A stretch of DNA of 64,000 nucleotides, from sequence record PV764602.1; one strand, written 5' to 3'. Every line of letters begins with the position of its first letter. Positions within the stretch are counted from its first letter, which is position 1. The translations under genes were made by a program, and so were the position numbers. Below the pieces are notes generated by a model, which did not search any database, had not been told where the DNA came from, and saw only the letters and a list, made by a program, of their open reading frames with translations. Positions 8,832 through 54,761 of the stretch are shown in pieces.

Positions 8832-10223
8832 ATGTGGATCACCCCTCAGAATCAAACTCTTGATGACACGTTCGATCCATACTTTCCGGGTACAACTCGG
8901 TGGTATGGTTACACCGGCATCCTCATCAACAATACGCAAGACACCTACGATCGGTACGCTCCTTTGCAGTATGGCAGGCAAGCTCCATCCACGGCGATCC
9001 TTGCGCAGAATCAGGTAGACCTGAATCAGATTTACGCAGCCCGAGGTACAGCCGGCTACCTGCAAGGTATCTCTATCCCAAATTGCTACGTGGGCTGCTC
9101 TGGCGTTACCATCAACGATCTTCTCGCTGCTCGATGCACCATCATCATCAAGAACGACGGTACGTGGCAGCAGTGGTTCTATTCCACCAACTACAAGACG
9201 GATAGCCCGGGTGCATATGCACCTCCTAATCGTGGCATCCCTCGAACCGAAACCAACTTCAGCAACGGACGCATGAACGCCGCCGGTAACTGGGCACAGA
9301 TTCCGTTCGCTGGTGTGGGTAACAACTACGAGACTTTCTGCCACGCTCCTTGGGCTCCATACGAAAGCAAGAACCCACCTGATCTAGATTGGGGTACTGC
9401 CGATCACTATAATCGGTATGATGCTGCACTCATCAACTATATCTGGCACAACTTTAAGGGCCAAGGACAGTTCGGTAGTGCTAGTGATCCATACGTGGTG
9501 CAGAACACTACACAGAACCCTAATGAAGACATTCCAGATGGTCGGGTATATCGCATCGACCGCGATATTCGGTTCACCCTTGGCTTGACTGCACAGGGAC
9601 GCAACAACGTTCGTTGGAACTACGATGACAACGGTGCTCTGTCATGGTACAACCGAGCCAACTTTTCGGTGTACATTCAGACACCCGGCGGCGGTCAGCG
9701 TGTAGGTGCCACCTGCCTTATGACCAATGAGATTCGTTGGAATGCGTGGAATTGGACGGGTGGTAGTGTCGGCGGCGGTGGTGGCGGTGGTGGCGGTGGT
9801 TGCGTTGCTGCTACCAGCTATGTTGACTTCCAAAAGACCGCAGGCACTGTTGAGGCAGGCGACTACCTCATGGGTATGACGGATGATCTGCAATTTATGG
9901 AGCTACACGTCCTGAGTGTGCGTCGTCAAGTGCAACCGTGTGTCCGACTCTACTCAAAGAGTGGCGTCACCCTTGTGTGCTCAAAGTCCACGCCGCTGAC
10001 CCTACAGAACGGAGATTGCGTGCTGGCAGGCGAAGCACGAGCAGGTATCAAGCTTCCGGTACGATTCTTCGCGGCTGATCCTGAGTGGGAAACCATCGTC
10101 AAGATCGAGGAGGTTGGCAACCGGGAAGTGATGCTCATCAACTGCGGTGGACAGAGCTATGCTGCCGGTGAGTTGCCGGGCCGCTATATCTACACCCACA
10201 ACAACAACCAGCAGAAGATGTGA
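8832..10223 (+). CDS. putative tail-tip adhesin with poly-Gly linker and C-terminal Hint domain
   Basis: Three N-terminal repeats ending DLNQIYAARGTA; G10 at 9771-9800, then CVAATSYV (block A, Cys at 9801) and IYTHN (block G, 10197-10202). Confidence 0.75.
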   Translation: MWITPQNQTLDDTFDPYFPGTTRWYGYTGILINNTQDTYDRYAPLQYGRQAPSTAILAQNQVDLNQIYAARGTAGYLQGISIPNCYVGCSGVTINDLLAARCTIIIKNDGTWQQWFYSTNYKTDSPGAYAPPNRGIPRTETNFSNGRMNAAGNWAQIPFAGVGNNYETFCHAPWAPYESKNPPDLDWGTADHYNRYDAALINYIWHNFKGQGQFGSASDPYVVQNTTQNPNEDIPDGRVYRIDRDIRFTLGLTAQGRNNVRWNYDDNGALSWYNRANFSVYIQTPGGGQRVGATCLMTNEIRWNAWNWTGGSVGGGGGGGGGGCVAATSYVDFQKTAGTVEAGDYLMGMTDDLQFMELHVLSVRRQVQPCVRLYSKSGVTLVCSKSTPLTLQNGDCVLAGEARAGIKLPVRFFAADPEWETIVKIEEVGNREVMLINCGGQSYAAGELPGRYIYTHNNNQQKM

Positions 10224-10642
10224 TGATTGGTTCTGACCAACTCTCAGAAGTAGGTGTACCTGTCGGAGAGCTCTCCATTGGGAGGACTCTCGACGTATAT
10301 GCGGTGGACGATCTACACTCGGTCATCCGCCTGAAAGGAACCGTCTCAAATCGGGTCCTGCGCAGTGCAGAAGTAGTAACCATCACAACTGCCTCCGGCG
10401 CTTCCGTTGTGGTGGCTGCCCAAAGTCGCCTCCCTGTCTATAGCGGACAGACAGCGCTGGCTAAGAATGTTGGTGCCAACATGATTGCTGTGATGGCCCC
10501 TAATGGCGCTTTTCGGTGGGAGCGGGTTGCCACCATCGAGGCTGGTACTGAGGCCGTAGTGGACCTCAAGTGTGAAGGCTACATAGTAGCCGGTAACGAT
10601 CCTAAAACCGGGCTAATCTTGGTGTCTGGATCGCTGCCGTGA
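10220..10642 (+). CDS. stand-alone degenerate Hint-like protein
   Basis: Aligns by eye with the upstream Hint domain (V.ITT.SG..V..S...LP; WE.V..IE.G...V.DL.C.G...AG) but lacks the catalytic Cys and HN. Confidence 0.6.
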   Translation: MMIGSDQLSEVGVPVGELSIGRTLDVYAVDDLHSVIRLKGTVSNRVLRSAEVVTITTASGASVVVAAQSRLPVYSGQTALAKNVGANMIAVMAPNGAFRWERVATIEAGTEAVVDLKCEGYIVAGNDPKTGLILVSGSLP

Positions 10643-11402: not shown

Positions 11403-11948
11403 ATGGCTGAGTTTGACATTGCCTATAGGCAGCAGAACATCGAGTCGGATTTGATTGATGATCCTACTGACCCTGGGGCTGTGACAAACTATGGTTGGAA
11501 CCTTGGCTCCCTCCGCTTGGTGGGAGTCGAGGCCGACTACGAATTCGTCAAGAGTATGACGGCGGCAACTGCCAAGGAATTGTATCGTCAGTATTTCTGG
11601 CATCCACTTTGGACCGAACTCAAATGTCAGCAGGCGGCAAACAAGCTGTTTACCCTCGCTGTGACAACGTGTGCACCCAACAACTTCAACTTGGCTACTC
11701 GCTGTTTGCAGAGGGCCTTGTGGGCATCGGGCGCTTACGTGCATGAGGATGGAAAGCTTACAGAGGATGTAATAAGCGCGGCTAACGCCGTTGAGTGTTC
11801 GGCCCTAAGCTCTGCCATGCGTAGTGAAATGGCCTCCTACTACAGGACGCTTAACGCGGAGTATGAACTGAGGGTCAAGTACAAGCTGCCCGTGGTAGTC
11901 CCCGTGAATCGTTACATTCGCGTGTGGCTTCACAACTCCTATCGTTGA
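11403..11948 (+). CDS. glycoside hydrolase 108-like lysozyme (divergent)
   Basis: ESDLIDDPTDPGAVTNYG resembles GH108 EGGYxxxPxDPGGETxYG; LQRAL...DG peptidoglycan-binding segment. Confidence 0.75.
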   Translation: MAEFDIAYRQQNIESDLIDDPTDPGAVTNYGWNLGSLRLVGVEADYEFVKSMTAATAKELYRQYFWHPLWTELKCQQAANKLFTLAVTTCAPNNFNLATRCLQRALWASGAYVHEDGKLTEDVISAANAVECSALSSAMRSEMASYYRTLNAEYELRVKYKLPVVVPVNRYIRVWLHNSYR

Positions 11949-11958
11949 AGAGGATGGC

Positions 11959-12684
11959 ATGACCATGAGCACGGAAACCGTTCTGATCGGTCTTGGCTGT
12001 CTACCTGATAACGCTCAAGCCCTTGAGGGGGCGTGCATTCGGTACGGCATCGAGACTACGTGGCACAAGTCCATTTTCATCGGACAGATCGCTGTAGAAA
12101 CAGGTGGCTTCCGTGCCACCCGCGAAAGCATGAATTACAGCGTTGAAGGTCTTATCAATGGTTTTGGCCGTCACCGTATCAGTGTGGCGGACGCTCAGAA
12201 ATACGGGCGTATTGATAAGGTCGTGAACGGCAAGAAAACTGTTATCCGAGCAGCTAACCAAGTAGCCATCGCCAACATCCTGTACGGCGGTGAGTGGGGA
12301 CGCAAGAATTTGGGTAATACCGAGTTGAACGACGGATGGAATTTCAGGGGCGGCGGTGACAAGCAATTGACTGGCCGCGCTAATTGGACCAACTACAGCA
12401 TGGACACCTATGGTGACTTGCGTGTGCTGGAGAATCCTACTCTGATCGAACTCTATCCCGACAAGAGCTACACTGCTGGTTGGTTCTGGCAACGCAACAA
12501 GCTGGGTGACATTGCTTCGCAATATGTGCTCCCTGATGATCCCAAATCTCCGGAGTACGATTCCATCCTGCGTTCTACTGTTACGGTAGTTACCAAGAAG
12601 GTCAACGGCGGTGACAAGGGTTTGGAGGATCGCATCATGTGGACGAAAAAGGCCCTGCAAGGCTTCAATCAACTCGTACTGTGA
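11959..12684 (+). CDS. endolysin, glycoside hydrolase family 19
   Basis: FIGQIAVETGGF, DGWNFRGGGDKQLTGRANW, VTKKVNGG..GLEDR motifs. Confidence 0.9.
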   Translation: MTMSTETVLIGLGCLPDNAQALEGACIRYGIETTWHKSIFIGQIAVETGGFRATRESMNYSVEGLINGFGRHRISVADAQKYGRIDKVVNGKKTVIRAANQVAIANILYGGEWGRKNLGNTELNDGWNFRGGGDKQLTGRANWTNYSMDTYGDLRVLENPTLIELYPDKSYTAGWFWQRNKLGDIASQYVLPDDPKSPEYDSILRSTVTVVTKKVNGGDKGLEDRIMWTKKALQGFNQLVL

Positions 12685-12690
12685 CTAACG

Positions 12691-12720
12691 TGCTGGGAAC
12701 ATTAGTTCCCAGCATTCTTC
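12691..12720 (+). terminator. Rho-independent terminator
   Basis: TGCTGGGAAC-ATTA-GTTCCCAGCA followed by TTCTTC. Confidence 0.7.
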
Positions 12721-12736
12721 GTATAGGCCCCTGACT

Positions 12737-13102
12737 ATGAGAATTTTAGCCAATAGCACCAAGGTACGCGAAGGGGATTTCTCCAAGCTTCGTATCCCAA
12801 AAGCAAAGCAAGTCAAGGTGCACACGCATGACGCATGGCAGGGCCGAAAGAATCATCACCTGTCCTACGATTTTACTGCACCTAGCACTAGCATGCACCA
12901 TCAAGCAGTCGGGAAGGCCATCCATGAGCATCTTGCGTCTCATGGCCTGTCTCCACACAAACGCTCCAGTTCGGGCAACACGGTTACCATTGAGTACAGG
13001 CACCCATCGGGTCACCGCGCCGTTGTCAAGATGAAGCGTACAAAGCTCGCAGGCGATCCCAACCATCACGTGGAATTCGCCGTAGAGAAGACCGGTAACT
13101 AA
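12737..13102 (+). CDS. His-rich basic protein, homologous to modules of the 23416 protein
   Basis: AIHEHLASHGLSPH...EYRHPSGHRAVV resembles HIHTKLHEAGFQPH...YRDASGHEARV. Confidence 0.7.
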   Translation: MRILANSTKVREGDFSKLRIPKAKQVKVHTHDAWQGRKNHHLSYDFTAPSTSMHHQAVGKAIHEHLASHGLSPHKRSSSGNTVTIEYRHPSGHRAVVKMKRTKLAGDPNHHVEFAVEKTGN

Positions 13103-13122
13103 CACTTCAATGAGGTAACGTC

Positions 13123-13464
13123 ATGCCCTTGTGGTTGACTGCATGGTTTGCGAAAATGTGGGCCAAGTGCTCGCAGTATGTCATTGCCGCTGGCTCCATA
13201 TTGGCGGCAATTGCTGGTATCTTCCTGTACGGTCGCTTCAAGGGTAAGTCCGCCGCCGATGCAAAGCATGCGGAGCAGGATGCGAAACGAATTGAGGCTG
13301 AAACCAAGATCGTTGAGAAGATCGACCAAGCTCACGAATCTACCCGTGAGCAGGTCGAGGAAAAAATCGAGAAAATCCCTGCTCCAACTACGGATCCTAA
13401 CGAGACAGTTAGGGTGGGGGATGCACCTAAAGATTCGGCCGCAGGCAAATTGAGGGGCTGGTAA
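13123..13464 (+). CDS. inner-membrane spanin (Rz-like)
   Basis: N-terminal TM (YVIAAGSILAAIAGIFLYG) followed by a coiled coil; coupled to a lipoprotein gene. Confidence 0.8.
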   Translation: MPLWLTAWFAKMWAKCSQYVIAAGSILAAIAGIFLYGRFKGKSAADAKHAEQDAKRIEAETKIVEKIDQAHESTREQVEEKIEKIPAPTTDPNETVRVGDAPKDSAAGKLRGW

Positions 13465-13691
13465 TGAAAACTCTCCTGATTATCGCCATCGCCTTACTTG
13501 CAGGCTGCGCAACTACTCCACAAGTGGTGGCTCAAACCGACATTTGCGCTGGCTGGAAGGCCATCAAGGTCAACGAAAACGACGAATTCACGGATGGAAC
13601 TGCCAAGCAGATTCTAGCGCACAATTGTCAAGGCGCAGCCTTGAAGTGCTGGGCCTATCCGAGGAATGATCCCCAAATTTGTGAACGCTAA
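13464..13691 (+). CDS. outer-membrane spanin lipoprotein (Rz1-like)
   Basis: Lipobox LLAGC; additional Cys residues; TAATG overlap with the i-spanin. Confidence 0.8.
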   Translation: MKTLLIIAIALLAGCATTPQVVAQTDICAGWKAIKVNENDEFTDGTAKQILAHNCQGAALKCWAYPRNDPQICER

Positions 13692-13700
13692 GAGGTAACA

Positions 13701-16085
13701 ATGCCGCTGCCCACTTCCATCCAACCCATCATTGAGAATACTCCGGACATTCTCAAAGCATGTGTTGAAGTCTATCAGTCCATGTCTCTGCTACAGGACC
13801 GGGGCTTCATGTTCTTGAACGAGCAGATTGAATTGCTCACGTCTACGGGTCAGGTGGCACACGTCACCACTGCGTATGGTACTCAGGTTGAGTTGCCCAC
13901 GTATCATACTCTGGCAGCCACCTCGAACGCCTCTACGGAATTGGTGCAGCAGTTTCAGCGCCAAATCTACGACGTGTTCACTAGCAACAACCCGACGGTA
14001 ATCATTAGTGACGGTCTTGGTAACGACACTCAGGTGATCGGCTATCAGACCATGAACGACAAGGTTAACGCTACGTCGGACGTGGCTTCTATCGCCAACA
14101 CCAACGCGCTCAACGCGCTGGGTAAGGCCACCGAAGCGCTGAACCGTGTTACCAACTCCGAGCTCAACGCCAACGTGGCTTTGGCGAACGGCACACCACC
14201 CACCTATCAGACGCGTTCGGTTCTCGATACTGTTACGACGATGCAACGCAATAGTATCGCCTACGTGATCGCTGATCCGGTTCCCACCAACAACACCATC
14301 TACCAGTACAACGGTACTGCATGGACTCCTCAGTATGATCGGCTGCTGACCGCCCTAGGTAGTCCGCGTGGCTATCTGGCCCCACTCACGGGCGCTATCT
14401 ACCGTACCTATCAGAGCAAGCTAGAATCACTGGTTACTCCTGAAGACGTGGGGGCCAAGGGTGACGGCACTACTGATGACGGTCCCGCCTTCATCGCCGC
14501 CGCTGCGAACGGGCGCCTGATTGTGCTGTCCCCCAACAAGACCTACCGTATCACCTCCAACGCCACTGTAGGCAGCATCATGCCTAATGGCTCCAAGATT
14601 TCCATCGGTCCGGGCGCTACCCTGACTTTTGATGGCCTGATCGTGGACGATGCTACGGTTGTGTTTACGGGTGAGGGCAACGCCGTCAGCAGCACTAGCG
14701 TCTACAGCGTTGGCTGGTTCGCAGGTGATAGCTTTAACGCCAAGTGGCTCGCCATGAAGCGTGGTTTCACCCAGCAGGTAGTCAAGTACGTCACGCTGCC
14801 GATGCCGCACCGCACCGATCCTGCGGCAACTACCGCAGCTTCGGACGGTCAGGCACGTTGGAAGCTTACGGACTCTGTGGTCTTCAACAATACGGAATCT
14901 AACCTGATCGTCAATGCGCTGGGCGAATTCCTTGTGGACCAGTCCGCCTCGCTGTCGGCAGGTGCTTTCATCCTTGGCGAGCTGACTGCCCCCTCCAGCA
15001 TCAACTTCCCGAACGGCTTGCGCGTCCTGTGTAACGGTAGTGCAACTTATGGTCTGCGCGTTCGCGGCGGTAGCAGCATCAGTTTTGAAGAACTACTGGT
15101 TCTGGACAGTGCAACCAACTCCGGCATCCTGTGGGACAACTATAACGGCCCGAGTCATCGCATTAGCTTCGACCGCGTGCGTATCGACGGCTTTGGTGTG
15201 GCAGGCGTAACTATCCAGCCGCAGGGTGGCCCGAGCTATCCGAACCAATCGCCTCCGATCACTTCGTGTTCGATCAATTCGCTGCAAACGCGAGGCGGTC
15301 GTAGCGGCTGCACGAACTTCGTCAAGATCGCGGGTAACGTGGATGGCCTGACCATCACCAACGTCCTTGAAGATCGTCCGTCGGGTAGCCTGCTGTTCGA
15401 CTGGAGCGATTCCATGTTCTCGCTGACTAACACTCAGTACGGCACGATTGGTCGCTCCGGTTTGGAGATTGGTCACATTCAGGCGACCAGCACCCAGCTG
15501 CCCATCATCCGTGCGTTCGACAGCACTTCCGCTGCTGACCCTGCGAATGGCAAGATCACGTTCTCGGTAGAGCACATCTATCAGGCGTATCAGCAGAACA
15601 TCGTTCCGGTCATCATGGAATACTCGAAGAACTGCACCATCGGACGTATCAACGCAGGACGCCCCACCTCTAGTCAGGAAGTGCTTGTCCGTATCTTCCG
15701 CGACTGCGAGGGTATTTCTCTGACCGGTACACACTACACCGCTGTTCGTAGTCAGGCCCTGCGTACTCAGTTTGACGGACGCTTCGGCATGGTGGACGTG
15801 GTGCAGCAGAACTCTGCGATCTTCACGGATCTAAACACTGCGGCACTGACGTTCAAGTTTGACCTAATCTGCCTCACCTCCGCGTCTACTTACGCTTCGG
15901 GTTGGGCAGGCGCCAACGCTCTCGATATTCCCACGTCGCTGACCAAGAATATCAACGTTGCCCAGGGTCCGCTGGAAGGAACGACCGGCCCTGAAAGCAC
16001 CCTCAGCATCAGTGCTGCGGAAAACAAGTTCTTTGTGGAAAACCGAACCGGACAGAATCAGCTCGTTGCGGTTCTCATGTCCTAA
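13701..16085 (+). CDS. tailspike / polysaccharide depolymerase (beta-helix)
   Basis: VTPEDVGAKGDGTTDDGPAFIAA pectate-lyase-3-type start, then beta-helix-like repeats. Confidence 0.8.
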   Translation: MPLPTSIQPIIENTPDILKACVEVYQSMSLLQDRGFMFLNEQIELLTSTGQVAHVTTAYGTQVELPTYHTLAATSNASTELVQQFQRQIYDVFTSNNPTVIISDGLGNDTQVIGYQTMNDKVNATSDVASIANTNALNALGKATEALNRVTNSELNANVALANGTPPTYQTRSVLDTVTTMQRNSIAYVIADPVPTNNTIYQYNGTAWTPQYDRLLTALGSPRGYLAPLTGAIYRTYQSKLESLVTPEDVGAKGDGTTDDGPAFIAAAANGRLIVLSPNKTYRITSNATVGSIMPNGSKISIGPGATLTFDGLIVDDATVVFTGEGNAVSSTSVYSVGWFAGDSFNAKWLAMKRGFTQQVVKYVTLPMPHRTDPAATTAASDGQARWKLTDSVVFNNTESNLIVNALGEFLVDQSASLSAGAFILGELTAPSSINFPNGLRVLCNGSATYGLRVRGGSSISFEELLVLDSATNSGILWDNYNGPSHRISFDRVRIDGFGVAGVTIQPQGGPSYPNQSPPITSCSINSLQTRGGRSGCTNFVKIAGNVDGLTITNVLEDRPSGSLLFDWSDSMFSLTNTQYGTIGRSGLEIGHIQATSTQLPIIRAFDSTSAADPANGKITFSVEHIYQAYQQNIVPVIMEYSKNCTIGRINAGRPTSSQEVLVRIFRDCEGISLTGTHYTAVRSQALRTQFDGRFGMVDVVQQNSAIFTDLNTAALTFKFDLICLTSASTYASGWAGANALDIPTSLTKNINVAQGPLEGTTGPESTLSISAAENKFFVENRTGQNQLVAVLMS

Positions 16086-25611: not shown

Positions 25612-26451
25612 ATGATCGGTGAACGTCTCGCGTACCCAACTGGATATGGCTTCCAGTTGGGTATTCGCACAAGTGAACGTACCATGTGGTCAGATGACGG
25701 GCGCACTGTTCCTCTGGATCATAAGCCGCAGGTAGTTGCCAATCCTATCAACTGCCCGCATCCAATCCCCGAGGATCAATTGATCCCTGCTGATTGGCGC
25801 AATCTGCTCACGGCCAAGCTTCGGTGTCCTGCTTTTGGTACGCAACTTCTGTACGGCATGTGGGCGACCATCGCTCACCTGAGCAACTTCAAAGCTGCAC
25901 AGACGCCGTTGATCGAAATCACGGATGATCTACCTGCGCATAACCTTGGCAACTTCAACATTGTCCACGGTCGGCCTCGCATACAGGTAGCCAAGTCGCG
26001 CATCTACACTTACGCGGCGCTGGCGTCGATTATCGCCCACGAAACTGCGCACCAAATTCAACGCACCGTGTTCAACTCTTCGGAAGAGTCCCACGGCGAA
26101 CTGTTCGACAAGATTTGTAGGGAGATTACCTCCCGGACTGGCATTGCGATCCATCGTAGTGTCGATTTTGTTGGGGACAGGTCATTCGCTGTTAGCGATC
26201 CCCTGCCTAGCAAGTACCCCATTTACTACATCATCGCTGATGGGCGGGTATCGTACACGGATAGTCATAGTGAAGTGACGGAAATAATCACTGCTCCTGA
26301 CGCTATTGATGCAGACCTCCAAGTCTACAAGAGCCACGACATTAGCTTGATTGACTGGCTCCGTCCTGAAACTGACCTGAAACGATTTACCCGAGTTCGC
26401 CCGGACGTGCTAAAGGTCATCGCACACAGAGGCACACGCATTTACCCATGA
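25612..26451 (+). CDS. SprT-like zinc metalloprotease
   Basis: AHETAHQ (HExxH) followed by HGELF. Confidence 0.8.
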   Translation: MIGERLAYPTGYGFQLGIRTSERTMWSDDGRTVPLDHKPQVVANPINCPHPIPEDQLIPADWRNLLTAKLRCPAFGTQLLYGMWATIAHLSNFKAAQTPLIEITDDLPAHNLGNFNIVHGRPRIQVAKSRIYTYAALASIIAHETAHQIQRTVFNSSEESHGELFDKICREITSRTGIAIHRSVDFVGDRSFAVSDPLPSKYPIYYIIADGRVSYTDSHSEVTEIITAPDAIDADLQVYKSHDISLIDWLRPETDLKRFTRVRPDVLKVIAHRGTRIYP

Positions 26452-28454
26452 GCAACATTCACGATTTCATCAAGACCCAGCTGCTGGCTGCTGCCCATTT
26501 CCAAGAAACGCTGGATGCGGGTGGCAAGAAGTGGCTCAAGAGTGGTGGTATCGCCGACGGTCGGAAGTTCCTAGAGGAACGCAAGTTCCCTAAATCGGTC
26601 ATCAAGGCATACGATACTGCCATGAAGAACGTCCTTGCAGGTAAGGACTTTGAGGAAGACGTTGATCCGCATTTGCAGGAAGTACAGAATGCAGTGAAGG
26701 AGCGTCTGCCCAAGCTGACCAAGGACACTTCTATTCCGATCGCAGACATCAAGACTCTGAAAGACGTGAGTCTGATCCTGCGCACTGAATCGGACTCTGC
26801 ATGGGCACGTGTCGAGAAGGACATTGGCCGACTGCGTGACGAAGACCTCAACCGCATCATCGCTCCTGCTGTGGAATCCTCCAGCAAGTACGTCAAAGAC
26901 CTCAAGGCAGCGTTCAAGAAACTGACGGGCAAAGATGGTACTGACTTCCGTGACCTAGAAGAACTGGCTGATCTTGATACTGATGAGTATCGGGAAGCAG
27001 TCAAGAAGATCATGGGCAAGAAGCCGGCTGCTGCTAAGGAATTCACCAAGGCACGGAGCGAGTACACCAAGGCCAGCAAGAAGGCCCACATGGCTCATGT
27101 GCGTGCTTCTGGCAGCCACCTGATGGACGTGGAGACGGCCAAGAAACACCTTGAGTCTAAGGGTTTCCGTCATTCCATTCCTGAAGGCTTCAAGGGCAAG
27201 CTTGACGAGAACGGACGTATCCATACTGTGCATGGGGAGCCCATCGCTGGTGGTATCTCTGGCACCGTCAAGATGAATCCGAAGTACGAGAAGGGTTCTA
27301 GCGTCAATGTCCTGACCTACTATCCTCCGGGTGCTAAGACGCCGCAGTACCTGTTCACCGCAGGTGCCAAGGCTAACGCCATCCAGAAGAAGAGTCAGAA
27401 GGTTGACGAACTGTCCGATAAGATTGGTGACCTGCGTAAGAAGTGGGGCGCTGACCTGAACAGTAAGGACCCGAGCACTCGCATCGCTGCTGCCATCCTC
27501 GAAGCCTGCTACCACACGTCTGCACGTATCGGTAACCTGAGCAACAAGAATGACGGCATGACGACTTTGAAGGGCAAGAATGTCAAGGTCAACGGGGATA
27601 CGGTCACCTTCAGCTACACTGGTAAGTCGGATCAGCATCAGAAGCACGTAATGAAGGGTGATGATCCCATTTCCAAGAAGGCTGTGGAAATCATCAAGGC
27701 CCTCAAGGAAAACGCGAAGCCTGACGACCTGCTTTTCCGCAACAAGAATCGCCGCGTCGGTAGCCGTCAGGTCAACGATTACTTCACCTCCCTCGGTTCC
27801 CCCACCACGGTGCACAAGATGCGCCACGTTCGCGGCAACGCGATCATGAAGGAAGAACTGAAGAAGAAGCCGAAGACTGACGACGACAAGAAGATCACGG
27901 CCTTCCTGACTGCGGCTCTGGCCAAGGTTGGTGAGCAGCTGGGTCACTTCAACAAGGGCGAGGTCACCTTCGCCACTGCCCTGCAATCCTACGTCTCTCC
28001 GTCAATCGTTGAGAAGTATTATGACAGCTACAACATTCGTCCGCCCGCACGCATTCAGAAGGTTATTGACCAAGCCAAGAAGGACAATGGTGAACCGACT
28101 ACTAAGTTGCAGGACTTGCCGCATCACGGCGACGTGGCGGAAAAGCCTAAGGTACCTCGGGCGGTTAAGCGTGTAGCAAAGGAAGAAAAGGAAGCACCGA
28201 AGCCGCGTGTAGTGAAAAAGGTGGAGAAGCCTGCACCGAAGCCGCTGCGTCAAGTCAAGAAGGTGGAGAAGCCTGAACCCAAGGAACGCAAGCCCACACG
28301 CACGGTCAAGCACATTGAGCTGGGTCCCCTGTCTGCACAGCCTGTGAAGACGCCAGCTTGGTTCCAGAAGTTGAGCGGTAACGCACAGCGGACTTACATC
28401 AAGGAAAATCCGCACACCAAGTTGAAGCCCACCAAGCTGCCGGGCTCGAAGTAA
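26448..28454 (+). CDS. DNA topoisomerase IB with long N-terminal extension and Lys/Pro-rich tail
   Basis: Catalytic pentad by hand count: R360 (ARIG), K393 (YTGK), R459 (KMRH), H500 (LGH), Y515 (SYV). Confidence 0.85.
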   Translation: MSNIHDFIKTQLLAAAHFQETLDAGGKKWLKSGGIADGRKFLEERKFPKSVIKAYDTAMKNVLAGKDFEEDVDPHLQEVQNAVKERLPKLTKDTSIPIADIKTLKDVSLILRTESDSAWARVEKDIGRLRDEDLNRIIAPAVESSSKYVKDLKAAFKKLTGKDGTDFRDLEELADLDTDEYREAVKKIMGKKPAAAKEFTKARSEYTKASKKAHMAHVRASGSHLMDVETAKKHLESKGFRHSIPEGFKGKLDENGRIHTVHGEPIAGGISGTVKMNPKYEKGSSVNVLTYYPPGAKTPQYLFTAGAKANAIQKKSQKVDELSDKIGDLRKKWGADLNSKDPSTRIAAAILEACYHTSARIGNLSNKNDGMTTLKGKNVKVNGDTVTFSYTGKSDQHQKHVMKGDDPISKKAVEIIKALKENAKPDDLLFRNKNRRVGSRQVNDYFTSLGSPTTVHKMRHVRGNAIMKEELKKKPKTDDDKKITAFLTAALAKVGEQLGHFNKGEVTFATALQSYVSPSIVEKYYDSYNIRPPARIQKVIDQAKKDNGEPTTKLQDLPHHGDVAEKPKVPRAVKRVAKEEKEAPKPRVVKKVEKPAPKPLRQVKKVEKPEPKERKPTRTVKHIELGPLSAQPVKTPAWFQKLSGNAQRTYIKENPHTKLKPTKLPGSK

Positions 28455-35342: not shown

Positions 35343-37820
35343 ATGAGCGTCCTGTTTTCTAACAACGCATTGACGGTGTTGGCAGCAGCGGTCGGTCAGA
35401 ACGAGGTTACCTCGACTATCACTGTAGCAACTGGTGCGGGGCAGCGTTTCGCTGCCCCCACCAACGGTGACTATCAGGTCATTACGCTCTCCGATCCCCT
35501 GTATACCCGATTTGAAATCTGCCATCTAACTGCGCGCACGGGCGATACCCTCACTGTGTTGCGAGGGCAGGAAGGTACTACCAAGCAAGCGTGGGACGTT
35601 GGCGACCGCATTTATGCGTCCTTCACTGCTTCCACGGTCGGTCTCTTCCTGCGCGCTGACACTCCTGCGTCAATTAGCGGGCTGTGGGACTTCAGTACGC
35701 CGCCGCTAATCAATGGTAACAACATTTGGCATTCCGGCAACGTCACGCCTGCTGATCGTACCAAGGCGCAGACTATCTCCGGGCTCTGGACGTTCACGAC
35801 GCTGCCCAAGTTCAACGCATTTAATTTCGTGACGACTCAGGGCGCAACTATGGTTGGGCCCTTTTTGCTTTATGGGTCCCCGACTCAGGACAATGAGGCT
35901 GCCACCAAGCTGTATGTGGACAACCTCGCCGCCGGTCTGCACGATAAGGAAGCAGTGGTCGCAGCCAGTACCGATGCCGGTGGTAATGTCAATATCACCA
36001 GCGCCCCGAGTACGCTGGACGGTGTGACTCTTGTGGCAGGAAATCGCATTCTGCTCAAGAATCAGACGAACAAGACCCAGAATTTGATCTACGTGTTCAA
36101 CGCAGTTGGCCAGCCCCTTACCGCTGCTTCGGACAGTGATGAGACGGGTGATCTAAAGGCAGGTAGTACCGTATTCGTCACAGGCGGTACCGTCAACAAG
36201 AACTCACGTTGGACCGTCATCACCACTGACCCGATCACCATTGGCACCACTCCCATCGAGTGGACTCAGACGTCGGGTGCTGGTCAGATTCGTTCTGGCC
36301 CCGGCATCAAGATCATTGGTGACCAAATCAGCGCAGACGTTCCCGCTGCTGGCGGCCTGACGGTATCAGTTGCAGATGGCATTGGCTTGTCTGTGATGCA
36401 AGACCTAGTGGTCAACACCGGAGCTGCTGCCGCTGGAACCACGGGTGCCTCCTTGCGCTACAACAGCATCACGGTGGACAAGTTTGGTCGGGTAGTTAAC
36501 GCTACCAACCTACCTTATGCTCTGACCACTGGCGCAGTGTTTACGGGAGCCCTCACTCGCACTTCGACTCCTTCTTCCGGCAACGACATTACCACCGTAG
36601 ACTTTGTGCAGAATGCCATTGTCTCTATCAGCACCATGCGTCAGCCGGTTGCTGCGGTGGCTACGTCCAACGTTTCCCTAAGTGGCCTAGGCTTTATTGA
36701 CGGGTATCAGGTCAAACTCGGCGAGCGTGTTCTCGTTGCAGGACAGACTACGCAGACTGCCAACGGTGTTTATGTCACCACGGCTAACGCGTGGGTGCGT
36801 GCTTCGGACTTTAACAGCACTTCGTCCCTCGCCGCTGGCGTCATGTTCCCGGTTCAGAACGGTACCACGTTCAAGAATCAGATATTCATGCTGTCCACTC
36901 AGGGCACCATCAGTATCGGTACTACCCCTATCACCTTCCAGCGTGTGACGGGTACGGGGCTGATTAACAAGGCGTCAGGTGGCGGCATTGATATTGTCAA
37001 TGACTCCATCGGTCTCGAAACGCAATCGGGACTGACCGCAGGCACCTACAACACTGCTCGCGTCACTGTGAACAGTAAGGGCATTATCACTGGCATCGAG
37101 GCAGGCTCCTCGGGCGTGACCTCGTTTAATGGCCGTAGTGGCGTTGTGATGCCCGCTACGAACGATTACACCTTCGCTATGTTGGGTGGCAAGCCCACCA
37201 CCCTCGCAGGCTACGGCATTACCGACCCGGTCATGCTCCGCACTGGCGGCACGATCACTGGTGTTGTGTCCATTGACTACGGCAATCCAGCTGCAACGGA
37301 CGGTCCGTACCCACTGCTGTTCATGCGTCTTACCGAAGGTGAGCGCAATACCAACAAGGTTGGTATGAACATCATCAAGGAGGATCGCAATTCTTGGGCC
37401 ATCGCTGCTGTAGCTGGTTCGGATGTAGTCAACATCACTAACGGCAGCAAGTTGAATCTGCGGTTCCAAACCGCAATGGTTAACGACGCTGAGATTCTCA
37501 CTGACGCCAACTTTGATGCGTGGACTGCCGTTGCGTTCTCTACGGGTAACACCACTCGTAACGCGGTCGCGCGTGGGTGCTACATGGTAGACACTACCTC
37601 CCTTGCTGGTACGCTGGTACTGCCCTCCAATCCTGCTCCGGGCACAGCTGTTCGTGTTCTCGATGCTGGTGGTACGTTCGGTACCAAGAACCTGACTATC
37701 TCGCGCAACAACGCTAGGATCGTAGGCGCGCTGGAAGACTTGGTTTTGGACAAGAATAACGGTGGCGTCACGCTGGTTTACTACAACGCTGCACGTGGTT
37801 GGGTCCCGTTCTTTAGTTGA
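35343..37820 (+). CDS. proximal long tail fibre
   Basis: FSNNALTVL...GTT..AW N-terminus; two ATKLYVD / V..G.RILLKNQT....N..Y repeats; gp34-like C-terminal DTT...LP..P..G..V...D..G.F module. Confidence 0.85.
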   Translation: MSVLFSNNALTVLAAAVGQNEVTSTITVATGAGQRFAAPTNGDYQVITLSDPLYTRFEICHLTARTGDTLTVLRGQEGTTKQAWDVGDRIYASFTASTVGLFLRADTPASISGLWDFSTPPLINGNNIWHSGNVTPADRTKAQTISGLWTFTTLPKFNAFNFVTTQGATMVGPFLLYGSPTQDNEAATKLYVDNLAAGLHDKEAVVAASTDAGGNVNITSAPSTLDGVTLVAGNRILLKNQTNKTQNLIYVFNAVGQPLTAASDSDETGDLKAGSTVFVTGGTVNKNSRWTVITTDPITIGTTPIEWTQTSGAGQIRSGPGIKIIGDQISADVPAAGGLTVSVADGIGLSVMQDLVVNTGAAAAGTTGASLRYNSITVDKFGRVVNATNLPYALTTGAVFTGALTRTSTPSSGNDITTVDFVQNAIVSISTMRQPVAAVATSNVSLSGLGFIDGYQVKLGERVLVAGQTTQTANGVYVTTANAWVRASDFNSTSSLAAGVMFPVQNGTTFKNQIFMLSTQGTISIGTTPITFQRVTGTGLINKASGGGIDIVNDSIGLETQSGLTAGTYNTARVTVNSKGIITGIEAGSSGVTSFNGRSGVVMPATNDYTFAMLGGKPTTLAGYGITDPVMLRTGGTITGVVSIDYGNPAATDGPYPLLFMRLTEGERNTNKVGMNIIKEDRNSWAIAAVAGSDVVNITNGSKLNLRFQTAMVNDAEILTDANFDAWTAVAFSTGNTTRNAVARGCYMVDTTSLAGTLVLPSNPAPGTAVRVLDAGGTFGTKNLTISRNNARIVGALEDLVLDKNNGGVTLVYYNAARGWVPFFS

Positions 37821-37825
37821 TTCAC

Positions 37826-37857
37826 AGGCAGGTCCACCACGGGCCTGCCTTTCCTTT
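37826..37857 (+). terminator. terminator-like hairpin
   Basis: AGGCAGGTCC-ACCAC-GGGCCTGCCT followed by TTCCTTT. Confidence 0.55.
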
Positions 37858-37870
37858 GGTGGACTATCCA

Positions 37871-39808
37871 ATGACGATTCTTCAAACGCTGTACCCAATC
37901 CCGGATAACGTCCCACGAACTGATGCTTCGTTCAACACCTTCACTGGGGTCAACCGATTCACTAGGGTGGTGGCAGGTAATTCAACCCCGAACGAAGCAT
38001 ACGATCTATGTGCTGGGACTACAAAGATCGGAAGCACCCTAACCGTTATTGGCGATACTACGCTCAACATTGCCAAAGCTGCGTTACTGACAATTACGGG
38101 TAGTAACGCCATGATCTTCCAAGGCTTTGGAAGCTCTCAGGGCCGTATCACCCTGTTCGGTTGGCTAGGTGTCGATTCCGGCGATACTCTGGCCATCATC
38201 GACCGCGTAGGTATGTCCAACTATCGCTGGGCGCTCAGTGCAAGTCAGATGACGCTCAACGATAATGCTGTGTGGCATGCAGGCAACTTCAATCCCGATC
38301 TGTACCTCAAGGTCGCTGACGCGTCTTCTACTTACGTCAAGCTTGCCAACAGTAACAACAACATCACGGGCACGGTGTGGGGACTTCGCTCGGTCACTGC
38401 ATCGGGCTCCGACACCTTGTCCATACAGATTCAGTCGGGCGGTGCCTATCAGTACGGACGTGGCGCTGTATTGGAATTGAATGGCAAGAACGCAACTGGC
38501 AGCAACGCTGGCGGCTTCCGTCTGCTCAGTGACGGTCCCTCGGCGATCAATTCGTACTCCGGCACTCTATCCCTAGCTGCCTCGGGCGGTGGTCAGATTA
38601 CGTTCAACAGCTCCGGCCTGTCTCTGCAAGGGGCCACGAGTGTTGCAGGTGCAACCACATTTGCCTCTACGGTAGCAGTTACTGGCCTCATCACTGCCAC
38701 TGGCCAACTAAAGGTTGGGCCTGCTTCCGGCGAAGCGCGTATCAACTTTGGTCTGGACACGGGCTACATCTACAGTAGTGCCACCTCAATTGGCTACTAT
38801 TGGCCCGGTAGTAGCGCTGTCAACTTGTGGCGTCTTATTAAACCGGGCCAAAGCGAAGGTGTTTACCCTGCCTTGTCTATGATCGTGTCGGGAGGGGGTT
38901 ATTTCGACGGTATTGTTCGGGCTACCTCTAGTCTCATCAGCATCCACCCGGACGCCCTGCGTATGCGGCAATCCGCCCGCACCGTTATTCACCGCTTTGA
39001 CGGCAACGCTTATTACTGGCTTCGTACTGCGGCTGACGACCCCGATGGTGTCTGGGATTCCGCACGTCCTATGACCTATAATGTTGGTGGGGACCAGTTG
39101 ACGTTCAACCCTGCTGGTGGCGTAACCATGCAGACCCAGCTGACACTTTCCTTTAATGCGCCATTCCGACTCACGGGCTTTGGTGCAGCAGGCGCTATAT
39201 ACATTCACGGTACCAATGGTGCAGGCGATGACGTTTGCAGCATCTTACGCAACAATGCCAACTCTAACTACACGCTGACGTGGAACGGTGGTGTCACGAT
39301 CACTGGTGCTCAGACAGTAGCAGGCGAAGCTTACTGCAACAATTGGTTCCGCAGCAATAGCTCCGGCACTGGCTGGTATCATCAGGTACATGGCGGTGGT
39401 TGGTACATGTCGGATAACGATTACGTGCGTTCGTACAATCAGAAGGCAGTGGCTGGCTCTGATTTCGTGATTTGGTCTGATCGCCGTTCCAAGACCGAAG
39501 ACCGTGACTTGAACATTACTGACGTTCTTCCCAAATTCATGGGACTTGCCCCAAAGTGGTATGTCAAGAATGGCACGAAGGCCGAGTACGGCATGTTCGC
39601 ACAGGACGTGCGCGCACTGTTCCCCGATATGGTCAGCCTGACCAACAACGAAGGATATGACGATTACCACTTCCTCTGGATTAACATGCTTCATGCTCCC
39701 CACATTCTTGTGACCCAGGATAACGTGCGCCGCATCGAAGAACTGGAGGGTATCGTGGCCTCGCAGCAGCATCAGATCGCGCAGCTGCAATCTAGGCTTG
39801 AGGTGTAA
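37871..39808 (+). CDS. distal tail fibre A with S74 chaperone
   Basis: Starts MTILQTLYPIPDNVPR; NNWFRS...GWY...GGGWYM.D repeat; WSDRRSK motif followed by a coiled coil. Confidence 0.85.
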   Translation: MTILQTLYPIPDNVPRTDASFNTFTGVNRFTRVVAGNSTPNEAYDLCAGTTKIGSTLTVIGDTTLNIAKAALLTITGSNAMIFQGFGSSQGRITLFGWLGVDSGDTLAIIDRVGMSNYRWALSASQMTLNDNAVWHAGNFNPDLYLKVADASSTYVKLANSNNNITGTVWGLRSVTASGSDTLSIQIQSGGAYQYGRGAVLELNGKNATGSNAGGFRLLSDGPSAINSYSGTLSLAASGGGQITFNSSGLSLQGATSVAGATTFASTVAVTGLITATGQLKVGPASGEARINFGLDTGYIYSSATSIGYYWPGSSAVNLWRLIKPGQSEGVYPALSMIVSGGGYFDGIVRATSSLISIHPDALRMRQSARTVIHRFDGNAYYWLRTAADDPDGVWDSARPMTYNVGGDQLTFNPAGGVTMQTQLTLSFNAPFRLTGFGAAGAIYIHGTNGAGDDVCSILRNNANSNYTLTWNGGVTITGAQTVAGEAYCNNWFRSNSSGTGWYHQVHGGGWYMSDNDYVRSYNQKAVAGSDFVIWSDRRSKTEDRDLNITDVLPKFMGLAPKWYVKNGTKAEYGMFAQDVRALFPDMVSLTNNEGYDDYHFLWINMLHAPHILVTQDNVRRIEELEGIVASQQHQIAQLQSRLEV

Positions 39809-39809
39809 C

Positions 39810-45568: not shown

Positions 45569-46082
45569 CCCCGAAACCGCCTCCTTGCGCCGTCTCACCA
45601 ATACTGTAAAGAAAGGGGAAGTGCAGAAAAACCCAATTTCGCCCAAGCAGCTAGAGGTTCTCTCCGTAGAGGCTCCAGTTGCTTTCGACGTTATCGAGCC
45701 TCCGGCATCTGACCTTACCCCGCTGCCTACTGTATATGGGCCGCCGGTCATCCCGGAAGGTGACGTGGTTCCTGTCTTCAAGAAGCGCAATCTTGCGAAC
45801 GAGAATCGGAGAGAGATACGCCTGCTGAAAGAGCAGCTGCGTGACCTGTCTGAACCCTCCGAGGACGAACAGCTTGATCGTATCCTCGACTGGCTCAGTT
45901 CCAAGAATCTGGATGACGGATTCAACTACGCGCAGACGTTCTACAACACCACGTTCCTTGAGAGTCTGGACAAGAGCTTCGCCATCCGACTCGCTCAGAA
46001 CCTATACGCCATGTTCGCCAGTCAGGGGCGCGTTTACGCTCCGTGGGCGGACTTCGTTTCACATACTCCGGTGCTGGCATGA
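45516..46082 (+). CDS. hypothetical protein
   Basis: ATG 45516 in frame with track ORF 45393..46082; PETAS motif. Confidence 0.6.
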   Translation: MRILQNLRHTGSAPTQDSPETASLRRLTNTVKKGEVQKNPISPKQLEVLSVEAPVAFDVIEPPASDLTPLPTVYGPPVIPEGDVVPVFKKRNLANENRREIRLLKEQLRDLSEPSEDEQLDRILDWLSSKNLDDGFNYAQTFYNTTFLESLDKSFAIRLAQNLYAMFASQGRVYAPWADFVSHTPVLA

Positions 46083-54600: not shown

Positions 54601-54761
54601 GTGCCAAGTATGCGCCGGAACTGCGCAAGCGCTTCCCACTGCCTGTAGAACCGGACTTCGATTATCCTACCAAGCGTAAGGAAGCCAAGAAGGCTACCGA
54701 CAAGCTGCTGGACAAGGTAAAGAAGGGCAAGAAGGACAAAAAGAAGAAGGAGAAAGCATGA
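51693..54761 (+). CDS. polA: family A DNA polymerase with N-terminal UDG-like domain and 3'-5' exonuclease
   Basis: Exo motifs VDTET, NGKFD, YCAMD; polymerase motifs DFSVHEVR, RQGAKGITFGSIYG, VHDA; KPDIILVMG UDG-like region. Confidence 0.92.
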   Translation: MPFQRVKTTKFKNKVPAHLRELHCSPFDLSVPYEPSTKGKRCLIVTGHVSRHDLEANRLLSSAEDKHALSVTLEMARKWAKHFAKDGQSVENYSFSTINFNYHKNYHLSSEHHAESVRLSVKRVKEYIEEVKPDIILVMGDSASRHLLKTKTGHINHGLVHKISVGDTDYKAIPTIELSTLTMDPYMENGEKYEIAKTNLFMYAVRTISSIYLGKPCVSLKGVKPNAVFVNTMKRFKKMMTEVYAASAVSVDTETIGLKVLDNDILTIQFATSSEKGYVLALKHKDCPFNAKELKYIYAELRKFFSQKRLPHKKWKKQPYLIMQNGKFDLRVLREDLKVPCIQMPVWDVLAGEFVLDENLIDLRIHTDLKGAWGLEVMSARYNNTWYQTAEFGKADRVTIKEVSLNQAELDYCAMDVQMPFAIHLAQQKIAQAMEHEGGNYLADYRRMMLVQMSNMVHQLSSMKQRGMPLDMNYLMLLRSKASPLRKMIVEVEKKLKEMPNVKKANSMLLSERGAPSKGLFGAVTSWMFDLGKSAHKILLFIDLLKLKPVNYGKDGTTPAIDKVFQGVYADVPEVAVLTERSKIKKLDDSYGKGIWNQVKADPDVKKDGRIRPEYGFLLVTGRTNCTGPNLQQIPEHGKLAPIIKRLFYAPEGTLRIKFDFSVHEVRGWGIVANDNVLLSTFNNINDLVLRFRKKKNPTEADKTEVEVKGDMHKLNYSAFTGVPVEKVTKEERQGAKGITFGSIYGQSVKALAETLKKTVKEAQELTDRFFKKFSMAKKWLDRVGEQAVKRGYVTSPLGRRRNMWAGILGYERLHNALKRRGQNSPIQGMSSDIAIDAARLMEEAIYDFLLDMDELPEECSRPPMGVCAMVHDATEAEAQYRHVMALIWMMEYFAIHGVRKFLKDVFDLETHVDFAIEFAVGALGSEMRKWDWTQECLYDIIYKALQDQKNELKFKVDPDTEILNIYKWGAKYAPELRKRFPLPVEPDFDYPTKRKEAKKATDKLLDKVKKGKKDKKKKEKA

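What the first reader, a model, noticed from the sequence alone, without database searches (positions are those of the whole stretch)
9771..10223. Tail-tip adhesin carries a poly-Gly-tethered C-terminal Hint domain that cannot splice
Seen: G10 linker, then C-V-A-A-T-S-Y-V; block B reads CSKSTP (the usual TxxH His is absent); ends IYTHN-NNQQKM. Established: Hint domains autoprocess at the N-terminal Cys; splicing needs C/S/T at +1, and here +1 is Asn with only 6 residues left. Inference: a BIL/Hedgehog-like module that cleaves after Gly, forming a thioester that could ligate the adhesin C-terminus to a nucleophile (another virion protein or a small molecule), or that acts as a removable folding chaperone, distinct from the S74 chaperone on the neighbouring fibre.
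Basis: partly seen in the sequence, partly recalled or inferred. Interest (0 to 1): 0.75.

Follow-up and report, generated by a model that had tools for sequence, protein, structure and literature searches.

The report
Self-cutting Hint cap on phage fibre
The last 140 residues of a tail-fibre-region protein of a Xanthomonas jumbo phage fold like an intein/Hedgehog self-cutting domain, and they belong to a large, so far unnamed family that caps the ends of phage tail fibres and always carries a tiny lysine-bearing tail, which hints at an unusual self-removal or ligation chemistry.

Summary
ORF 8832-10223 (463 aa, phage PhiXhv-15) ends in Gly10, Cys324, a 134-residue domain, His456-Asn457 and a six-residue tail.

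A confident AF2 model (pLDDT 89) matches only inteins, Hedgehog HhC and BIL domains in the PDB (TM 0.6-0.73). HMMER alignments to two inteins put Thr387 where the block-B His normally sits.

The module is not a one-off. A profile search found about 1,100 protein clusters, and in the best 150 hits it lies at the extreme C-terminus of proteins of 90-4,560 aa. Their N-terminal parts are phage tail fibres or central fibres, and Pfam does not cover the module.

Across 157 copies:
- position 1 is Cys or Ser in 156;
- His-Asn is essentially invariant;
- the upstream 12 residues average 7.3 Gly;
- +1 is rarely Ser or Thr and never Cys;
- all 151 short tails hold a Lys (19 expected by composition).

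"Cannot splice" holds only for the canonical route. Type-A BIL domains have the same layout and splice weakly, and a ciliate BIL splices onto Lys.

My best reading is a self-excising C-terminal cap, with the thioester possibly resolved by the tail Lys. Processing itself is untested. I class it as a new variant of a known kind.

The parts
8832..10223 (+). Whole ORF, 463 aa (GenBank XYR93251.1, 'hypothetical protein' of Xanthomonas phage PhiXhv-15), last large gene of the baseplate/fibre block
   Evidence: neighbours hit baseplate wedge, tail protein and tail-collar fibre families
8832..9770 (+). N-terminal body, residues 1-313, beta-rich, fold unknown. It is shared only with two metagenomic full-length homologues; residues 10-120 hit PHROG 11610 (unknown function)
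   Evidence: AF2 pLDDT below 50; no PDB sequence match
9771..9800 (+). Gly10 tether, residues 314-323. Gly323 is the -1 residue of the predicted scissile bond
   Evidence: family-wide the 12 upstream residues average 7.3 Gly
9801..10202 (+). Hint-fold autoprocessing domain, Cys324 to Asn457 (134 aa, 14.7 kDa)
   Evidence: AF2 pLDDT 89, pTM 0.83; the 50 best Foldseek PDB matches listed are all inteins, Hedgehog HhC or BIL domains; profile hit to the gp41-1 intein at E 5e-5; mass
9801..9803 (+). Cys324, predicted position-1 nucleophile
   Evidence: Cys in 137 and Ser in 19 of 157 family copies
9981..10001 (+). Block-B equivalent, Ser384 to Thr390. Thr387-Pro388 sit where inteins have His-(Pro/Leu)
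   Evidence: alignments to gp41-1 and PhoCDC21-1 inteins; Ser384 in 150, Thr387 in 141 (His in 1) and Pro388 in 155 of 157 copies
10194..10202 (+). Thr455-His456-Asn457, block-G equivalent; Asn457 is the predicted cyclising residue
   Evidence: His 157/157, Asn 155/157, Thr 132/157
10203..10220 (+). Six-residue tail (mini C-extein) with Lys462 at the penultimate position
   Evidence: 138 of 151 tails are 3-8 residues long, all hold Lys, and Lys is penultimate in 117
10223..10642 (+). Downstream 139-aa CDS whose ATG overlaps the stop (TGATG). Function unknown. It is conserved only in the closest lineage, so it is probably not a universal partner of the Hint cap

Best explanation
The ORF encodes a structural protein of the baseplate/fibre module of a jumbo myophage. 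Its C-terminus carries a self-excising Hint (Hedgehog/intein) domain on a flexible Gly10 tether. It belongs to a large, unnamed, phage-borne Hint family that resembles type-A bacterial intein-like (BIL) domains. Proposed chemistry, all steps inferred: (1) Cys324 attacks the Gly323 carbonyl in an N-S acyl shift and forms a Gly-thioester. The invariant Thr387-Pro388 stand in for the missing block-B His. (2) Asn457, helped by His456, cyclises and cuts off the hexapeptide tail. (3) The thioester is resolved by an amine of that tail, either the epsilon-amine of the always-present Lys462 or the freshly exposed alpha-amine, or failing that by water. The net result is that the 14.7-kDa Hint domain leaves. 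The mature 35.9-kDa body then ends in the Gly run, with or without the 0.76-kDa Lys peptide attached (36.6 kDa). Biologically the cap would act as a removable maturation module on the distal end of fibres, in the same position as the non-homologous S74 caps that two other fibres of this phage carry.
For: Shown: Hint fold with high confidence. Sequence-profile link to inteins. The module sits at the extreme C-terminus in 153 of 154 proteins examined. The N-terminal parts of relatives are phage tail proteins: Phage-tail_3, central tail fibre J, tail fibre PHROGs, and one gene directly after a tape-measure gene. Every element a two-junction reaction needs is kept across 157 copies from clusters at 50% identity: Cys or Ser at position 1 in 156, His 157, Asn 155. 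A Lys is present in 151/151 tails, although these proteins are Lys-poor (2.35% K, about 19 tails expected by composition). There is strong purifying selection: 30 nucleotide changes and 1 amino-acid change against Ep026. Precedents from the literature: type-A BILs with His-Asn and no +1 nucleophile cleave at both junctions and splice by aminolysis (PMC4031507; PMC7664689). The BIL2 domain of Tetrahymena forms a Lys isopeptide by splicing (PMC8616854). The same phage has S74-capped fibres, so removable C-terminal caps are in use in this virion.
Against: No experimental evidence of processing exists for any member. The papers on XacN1, LucasX, DLP6 and PhiXhv give no peptide-level data for these proteins. 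The block-B His, normally needed for the N-S shift, is absent. The known rescue by a bulky -1 residue (PMC6333167) cannot apply with Gly at -1. The Lys lies at a variable distance from Asn (+1 to +9 in nearly all tails) but at a fixed distance from the C-terminus. That pattern could mean it is a recognition or anchoring motif rather than a nucleophile. A poly-Gly tether argues against a templating chaperone role like that of S74. I could not read model coordinates, so the Lys-to-thioester distance is unknown.
Confidence: 0.6

Rival explanations
1. N-terminal cleavage only, in the Hedgehog or type-B BIL manner. The thioester is simply hydrolysed. The Hint domain leaves with its tail still attached, and His-Asn and Lys are kept for folding or for docking the C-terminus.
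For: Cleavage products dominate for BIL domains (PMC7664689; PMC4031507). The Lys is fixed relative to the C-terminal carboxylate (penultimate in 117/151) and not relative to Asn. Two tandem-Hint relatives end without Asn or a tail.
Against: Asn is kept in 155/157 copies and His in 157/157. Hedgehog-type domains that only cleave at the N-terminus do not depend on a terminal Asn step (the mechanism description says only the first acyl shift is used). A universally kept Lys in a 3-8-residue tail is hard to explain by folding alone.
Confidence: 0.2
2. Trans-ligation. The Gly-thioester is captured by a nucleophile outside the chain, such as a Lys of another virion protein, a host-surface amine or a small molecule, so that the fibre end becomes covalently attached.
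For: A flexible Gly-rich acyl-donor tail resembles ubiquitin-like donors. BIL2 of Tetrahymena transfers its N-extein onto Lys residues of other proteins (PMC8616854). Hedgehog HhC transfers onto cholesterol. Foldseek matches both (1at0, 6y75).
Against: There is no adduct-recognition region, only 3-8 residues after the Hint domain. No conserved partner gene was detected next to distant members. The built-in Lys offers a cis acceptor that would compete. A thioester is unlikely to persist on free virions unless the precursor is held unreacted.
Confidence: 0.1
3. A non-catalytic terminal domain. The Hint fold stays on the mature fibre as a binding or structural knob.
For: The block-B His and the block-F acidic position are not kept. 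Nothing shows cleavage.
Against: A purely structural domain would not keep a nucleophile at position 1 in 156/157 copies together with an invariant terminal His-Asn. The Cys/Ser alternation is the pattern of a catalytic nucleophile.
Confidence: 0.08
4. A decayed intein or selfish-element remnant left at a truncated gene end.
For: The best sequence match is a phage-type mini-intein, gp41-1.
Against: The same C-terminal architecture recurs in about 1,100 clusters on unrelated fibre bodies. There is no homing endonuclease, selection is strongly purifying, and two in-frame stops close the ORF.
Confidence: 0.02

Closest known systems
Type-A bacterial intein-like (BIL) domains (e.g. Clostridium thermocellum BIL, PDB 2lwy)
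   Same: Hint fold (TM 0.68/0.77). Cys at position 1, C-terminal His-Asn and no nucleophile at +1. Not a mobile intein: it sits in variable, surface-exposed proteins. It is expected to cleave at both junctions and possibly ligate by aminolysis.
   Different: No block-B His (Thr-Pro instead). Always the very last domain, with only a 3-8-residue Lys-bearing tail. A Gly-rich tether lies upstream. The carriers are phage tail fibre proteins rather than bacterial secreted proteins. No curated sequence model recognises it.
Hedgehog C-terminal autoprocessing domain (HhC, PDB 1at0)
   Same: A C-terminal Hint domain after a Gly-Cys junction. It uses the acyl shift to release the N-terminal functional part. 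TM 0.70/0.77.
   Different: Hedgehog has a sterol-recognition region after the Hint core and keeps the block-B His. Here only six residues follow, and an invariant His-Asn is present.
BIL2 of the Tetrahymena BUBL locus (PDB 6y75, 6tmm)
   Same: A Hint domain whose thioester is resolved by a Lys epsilon-amine to give an isopeptide (PMC8616854). The N-extein ends in a flexible Gly-type tail. TM 0.67-0.70.
   Different: BIL2 is flanked by ubiquitin-like domains and is eukaryotic. Here the candidate Lys sits in a tiny tail, no Pfam family of any kind (a ubiquitin-like domain included) was found, and Lys attack is only inferred.
Peptidase S74 intramolecular chaperone of phage fibres and tailspikes (PF13884)
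   Same: A self-removing C-terminal cap on phage fibres. It is present on two other fibres of this same phage.
   Different: No homology: a different fold and a Ser-Lys protease chemistry. S74 is contiguous with the helix it templates, whereas the Hint cap hangs on a poly-Gly tether.
Class 1 mini-inteins (gp41-1, NpuDnaB, SspDnaB)
   Same: The best structural and sequence matches. Cys1 and a terminal His-Asn.
   Different: No +1 Cys/Ser/Thr, no real C-extein, no block-B His, and not inserted in a conserved host protein.
Pretoxin HINT (PF07591) of polymorphic toxins
   Same: A Hint peptidase near the C-terminus of long filamentous proteins, some with tail-fibre repeats (PMC3482391). One of 50 relatives hits the model at 4e-5.
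   Different: PT-HINT sits in front of a toxin domain that it releases. Here nothing but a short tail follows.

Membership tests
Hint (Hedgehog/intein) superfamily | Hint beta-fold | tested here: met
   AF2 domain model pLDDT 89, pTM 0.83. The 50 best Foldseek PDB matches listed are inteins, HhC or BIL domains, E down to 4e-7, TM 0.6-0.73.
Hint (Hedgehog/intein) superfamily | Cys/Ser nucleophile as first residue of the domain | tested here: met
   Cys324. Family: Cys 137, Ser 19 of 157.
Hint (Hedgehog/intein) superfamily | Detectable sequence relationship to known members | tested here: met
   The domain profile hits the gp41-1 intein at E 5e-5 and the PhoCDC21-1 intein at 0.008. The single sequence gives only E 0.024. 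There is no Pfam or NCBIfam hit.
Class 1 intein | Cys/Ser/Thr at +1 of the C-extein | tested here: not met
   +1 is Asn458. Family: Ser 4, Thr 9, Cys 0 of 151, below the background share of these residues.
Class 1 intein | Block-B His | tested here: not met
   Thr387 aligns to the His of two inteins. Family: Thr 141, Ala 14, His 1.
Class 1 intein | Inserted in a host protein with a functional C-extein | tested here: not met
   Six residues, then two stops. The module is terminal in 153/154 proteins.
Class 1 intein | Terminal His-Asn | tested here: met
   His456-Asn457; 157/157 and 155/157.
Type-A BIL domain | Terminal His-Asn combined with absence of a +1 nucleophile (definition in PMC4031507) | tested here: met
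Type-A BIL domain | Sequence membership in the described BIL-A group | tested here: inconclusive
   None of the libraries searched returned a BIL-named model, and no BIL chain was found by sequence in the PDB. The BIL structure 2lwy is matched only by fold, at 14% identity.
Type-A BIL domain | Auto-cleavage at both junctions, weak splicing | not testable with these tools
   Biochemical property; inferred only.
Hedgehog HhC / Hog | Sterol-recognition region after the Hint core | tested here: not met
   Only residues 458-463 follow.
Hedgehog HhC / Hog | Gly-Cys scissile junction | tested here: met
   Gly323-Cys324. In the family -1 is Gly in 81/157 and -2 is Gly in 123/157.
Pretoxin HINT (PF07591) | Pfam model match and a toxin domain downstream | tested here: not met
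   No Pfam hit at E<=1 and no domain follows.
Peptidase S74 intramolecular chaperone | PF13884 match | tested here: not met
   No hit in this ORF or its neighbours. Hits in ORFs 37817-39808 and 39798-41936.
BUBL-type BIL (Lys-directed splicing) | Isopeptide formation with a Lys acceptor | not testable with these tools
   Only the universal tail Lys and the literature precedent.

The most novel reading that the evidence does not exclude
This is a new mechanistic class of Hint domain that carries its own acceptor. The obligatory Lys in a 3-8-residue mini C-extein attacks the Gly-thioester, giving 'isopeptide mini-splicing' that removes the cap quickly without water or thiols. In a bolder version, the uncleaved cap rides on the virion and arms the distal fibre tip with a latent Gly-thioester that captures an amine on a partner protein or on the host surface.
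Probability: 0.25. Interest if true: 0.85.

Novelty: new variant of a known kind. Interest (0 to 1): 0.68.

Why it matters
If the cap is processed as proposed, phages have a second, chemically unrelated way besides S74 domains to make self-removing ends on their host-recognition fibres. It would be used by roughly a thousand sequence clusters that are currently annotated as hypothetical.

It would change how mature fibre ends, and therefore receptor-binding tips, are read from phage genomes. It would also enlarge the Hint superfamily with a branch that works without the block-B His and with a Lys-bearing mini C-extein.

A compact 134-residue domain that cuts after Gly, and perhaps ligates to Lys, would also interest protein chemists. 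Even if only N-terminal cleavage occurs, a family model for this module would improve the annotation of many phage tail proteins.

Tried and rejected
**Searches that found nothing**
- Pfam, NCBIfam and PHROGs on the window protein gave no Hint family. The only hit was PHROG 11610 (unknown function) on residues 10-120.
- The full-length AF2 model left residues 1-321 below pLDDT 50, so the N-terminal fold stays unknown. A PDB sequence search of residues 1-313 found nothing.
- The profile built with the Gly-rich upstream region mostly hit scFv linkers in the PDB, which is noise. A domain-only alignment fixed this.
- Scanning bacterial genomes for loci failed three times because no 7-10-column stretch was conserved enough. 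Distribution in bacterial genomes and prophages was therefore not measured.
- No conserved accessory gene lies downstream of Hint-capped genes. BLAST found only lineage-local conservation.
- No published evidence of processing was found. The XacN1 text and supplement list ORF231 only as hypothetical. The LucasX, DLP6 and PhiXhv papers have no relevant mass-spectrometry data.
- Four literature searches for Hint or intein-like domains on phage tail fibres found no description of this module. The library lacks most subscription journals, so prior description elsewhere cannot be excluded.

**Readings rejected**
- PT-HINT toxin release: no downstream domain.
- Intein remnant: recurrent terminal architecture and purifying selection.
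- S74 on an adjacent ORF: none was found there.

In my private working notes I recalled, from memory, rough patterns of the conserved intein blocks and part of an intein sequence. None of this was used. The residue mapping in this report rests only on the HMMER alignments printed. The profile HMM and alignments my scripts wrote to /scratch are profiles of natural sequences.
Full report
**What is there**

The window is 100% identical, over the 1,392-base gene searched, to Xanthomonas phage PhiXhv-15 (PV764602.1, 228.7 kb). This is a contractile-tailed jumbo phage of X. hortorum pv. vitians (PMC13340338).

The finding lies at the end of ORF 8832-10223 (+), 463 aa, annotated as hypothetical.
- ten Gly (residues 314-323, bases 9771-9800);
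- Cys324, followed by V-A-A-T-S-Y-V;
- C-S-K-S-T-P at residues 383-388;
- I-Y-T-H-N ending at Asn457;
- a six-residue tail N-N-Q-Q-K-M;
- a TGA stop followed by a second in-frame TGA.

The next CDS starts with an ATG that overlaps the stop (TGATG).

**Context**

The upstream genes hit baseplate wedge (PHROG 219, E 4e-39), tail protein families and the tail-collar fibre N-terminal domain (PF12571). Downstream come a 139-aa ORF, a lysis cassette and a tailspike-like 794-aa ORF. The gene therefore belongs to the baseplate/fibre block.

"Tail-tip adhesin" is plausible but not shown. The N-terminal 313 residues have no recognisable family apart from PHROG 11610 (unknown function). They have no PDB relative and could not be modelled (pLDDT below 50).

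No S74 domain is detectable in the adjacent ORFs. Two fibre ORFs about 28 kb away, 37817-39808 and 39798-41936, do carry Peptidase_S74.

**Is it a Hint domain?**

Curated sequence libraries miss it: there are no Pfam or NCBIfam hits even at E<=1. A single-sequence PDB search gives only a weak match to the gp41-1 intein (E 0.024). A profile of eight domain-only sequences raises this to E 5e-5 and adds the PhoCDC21-1 intein at 0.008.

An AF2 model of residues 305-463, built with a 50-sequence alignment, is confident (pLDDT 89, pTM 0.83). Only the Gly run and the last residues are uncertain.

Foldseek against the PDB returns 59 matches at E<=0.001. The 50 listed are all inteins, the Hedgehog autoprocessing domain (1at0), the C. 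thermocellum BIL domain (2lwy) or the Tetrahymena BIL2 domain (6y75), with TM 0.6-0.73 and probability 1.00. The Hint fold is established as far as prediction allows.

The HMMER alignments to two inteins put Ser384 on the Thr/Ser position and Thr387 on the His position of block B, with Pro388 following.

**It is a family, not an oddity**

A word-indexed search found only eight relatives. Two are full length. Five share only the Gly run plus the C-terminal module, on a different 130-residue N-terminal part.

An exhaustive profile search of 1.84 billion cluster representatives found 1,141 proteins at E<=0.001 and 870 at E<=1e-10. Two of the top 150 match only the N-terminal part of the profile, so the module count is slightly lower.

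In the 154 proteins examined, the module ends within eight residues of the C-terminus in 153. The proteins range from 92 to 4,560 aa. Four carry two modules in tandem.

Where recognisable, the N-terminal parts are phage tail proteins:
- Phage-tail_3 (6 of 56);
- Rcc01698_C, Gp53-like_C and Mtd_N;
- PKD, Big_9, cadherin, fn3 and carbohydrate-binding modules;
- PHROGs "central tail fiber J" (7) and "tail fiber protein" (6).

One member sits directly after a tape-measure gene. Another lies in a large phage contig that encodes a Gp23-type capsid protein.

Among cultured phages, tblastn finds the module in PhiXhv-12/-15/-16, Ep026, Ep032, XacN1 (ORF231), RTH11, LucasX (LUCX_306) and Stenotrophomonas phage DLP6 (AAY80_267, "VlrC"). 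It is never annotated as Hint.

None of the 56 longer relatives scanned hits a Pfam Hint model at E<=0.001. Among the 50 shorter ones, one hits Intein_splicing (1e-5) and one hits PT-HINT (4e-5).

**What is conserved** (157 domain copies)

| Position or feature | Counts |
|---|---|
| Position 1 | Cys 137, Ser 19 |
| Position -2 | Gly 123 |
| Position -1 | Gly 81 |
| 12 upstream residues | 7.3 Gly on average |
| Ser384 | 150 |
| Thr387 | 141 (Ala 14, His 1) |
| Pro388 | 155 |
| His456 | 157 |
| Asn457 | 155 |
| Tail length 3-8 residues | 138 of 151 |
| +1 residue (of 151) | Pro 38, Ala 24, Leu 15, Val 15; Thr 9, Ser 4, Cys 0 |
| Lys anywhere in tail | 151 of 151 |
| Lys penultimate / last | 117 / 17 |
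| Pro as last residue | 76 |

Ser, Thr and Cys together make up 8.6% of +1 residues, against a 19% background.

These proteins are Lys-poor (2.35%). Composition alone predicts a Lys in about 19 tails. The copies are related, so this is not a true probability, but the contrast is extreme.

In the four tandem proteins, the short linker between the first His-Asn and the second nucleophile also always holds a Lys.

Against Ep026, the 453-nt module differs at 30 bases but at only one residue.

**How it most likely works**

Three things are conserved: a position-1 nucleophile that alternates only between Cys and Ser, an invariant terminal His-Asn, and an amine-bearing residue in a minute tail. These are what a two-junction Hint reaction needs, not a one-junction reaction.

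The literature supplies both precedents. Type-A BIL domains have the His-Asn pair and no +1 nucleophile. They mostly give cleavage products, and they can ligate when the amino group freed by Asn cyclisation attacks the thioester (PMC4031507; PMC7664689). The Tetrahymena BIL2 domain splices onto a Lys side chain to form an isopeptide (PMC8616854).

I therefore propose four steps, all inferred:
1. An N-S acyl shift at Gly323-Cys324.
2. Cyclisation of Asn457.
3. Resolution of the thioester by the tail's Lys462, by its new alpha-amine, or by water.
4. Release of the 14.7-kDa Hint domain.

The expected products are 35.9 kDa (body) or 36.6 kDa (body plus tail), from a 51.3-kDa precursor.

A built-in amine would make release fast and independent of external nucleophiles. 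That is an inference, not a result.

How the acyl shift is promoted without the block-B His is open. The rescue by a bulky -1 residue described in PMC6333167 cannot apply to Gly. The invariant Thr387-Pro388 pair is the obvious candidate.

The biological role is probably a removable cap on the distal fibre end, analogous in position to S74 caps. The floppy Gly tether argues against a templating chaperone. It may simply give three globular caps room at a trimer tip.

**Rivals**

- N-terminal cleavage only: confidence 0.2.
No recognition region and no conserved partner gene were found.
- An unprocessed structural knob: 0.08. This conflicts with the catalytic-type conservation.
- An intein remnant: 0.02.

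**Comparison and novelty**

It works most like a type-A BIL domain and meets that group's published definition. It differs in four ways: it lacks the block-B His, it is always terminal with a Lys-bearing mini C-extein, it hangs on a Gly-rich tether, and it lives on phage tail fibres.

It fails the defining tests for a class 1 intein (+1 nucleophile, block-B His, real C-extein), for Hedgehog HhC (no sterol-recognition region), for PT-HINT (no toxin downstream) and for S74 (no homology).

Four literature searches found no description of such a module on phage fibres. The held library is incomplete, so this is absence of evidence only.

I rate it a new variant of a known kind, with interest 0.68.

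**Limits**

- Nothing here shows that cleavage happens.
- Distribution in bacterial genomes could not be scanned.
- I also declare a slip. In my working notes I recalled intein block patterns from memory.

Noticed in passing
window 37817-39808 and 39798-41936 (+): Two overlapping fibre-like ORFs (663 and 712 aa) end in a Peptidase_S74 intramolecular-chaperone domain (E 8e-10 and 6e-5). The first also hits Gp34_trimer and Shufflon_N. The phage therefore uses two unrelated kinds of C-terminal cap.
   Followed up: partly
window 26448-28454 (+): A 668-aa protein with a eukaryotic-type topoisomerase IB catalytic core (PF01028, E 2e-19), unusual in a phage genome.
   Followed up: no
window 10221-10226 and 10223-10642: The Hint-capped ORF ends in two consecutive in-frame TGA codons. 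The next CDS starts inside them (TGATG). Its 139-aa product has a 30%-identical counterpart after the homologue P0003 but none after distant Hint-capped genes.
   Followed up: partly
window 11403-13691: A lysis cassette (two glycoside hydrolases and two spanin genes in the GenBank annotation) sits between the Hint-capped gene and a tailspike-like 794-aa ORF (13701-16085), so it interrupts the fibre genes.
   Followed up: no
family members P0029, P0073, P0110, P0116: Four relatives carry two Hint modules in tandem, joined by a 5-7-residue Lys-containing linker. In two of them the last module ends without Asn or a tail.
   Followed up: partly
alignment A4 (one member): One Hint-capped relative has a type IV pilin-like N-terminus (N_methyl and PilS Pfam hits), so the module may also occur on non-phage surface fibres. 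I did not identify which protein.
   Followed up: no
L011 (Stenotrophomonas phage DLP6) 1973-7447 and 7447-9114: DLP6 has two matches to the module. The 1,824-aa 'VlrC' protein after the baseplate wedge genes ends in it. The second match was not located; another 'VlrC' gene follows directly.
   Followed up: no
L015 / records OQ603353.1 and OQ603359.1: 'Erwinia phage Ep032' and 'Xanthomonas phage Ep026' gave identical match statistics to the query for this gene (95.6% identity, same bit score), despite different host labels. Both records are unannotated.
   Followed up: no
window 46043-50950 (+): A very large (1,635-aa) SNF2-family helicase-like protein lies next to a family-A DNA polymerase (51693-54761).
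   Followed up: no
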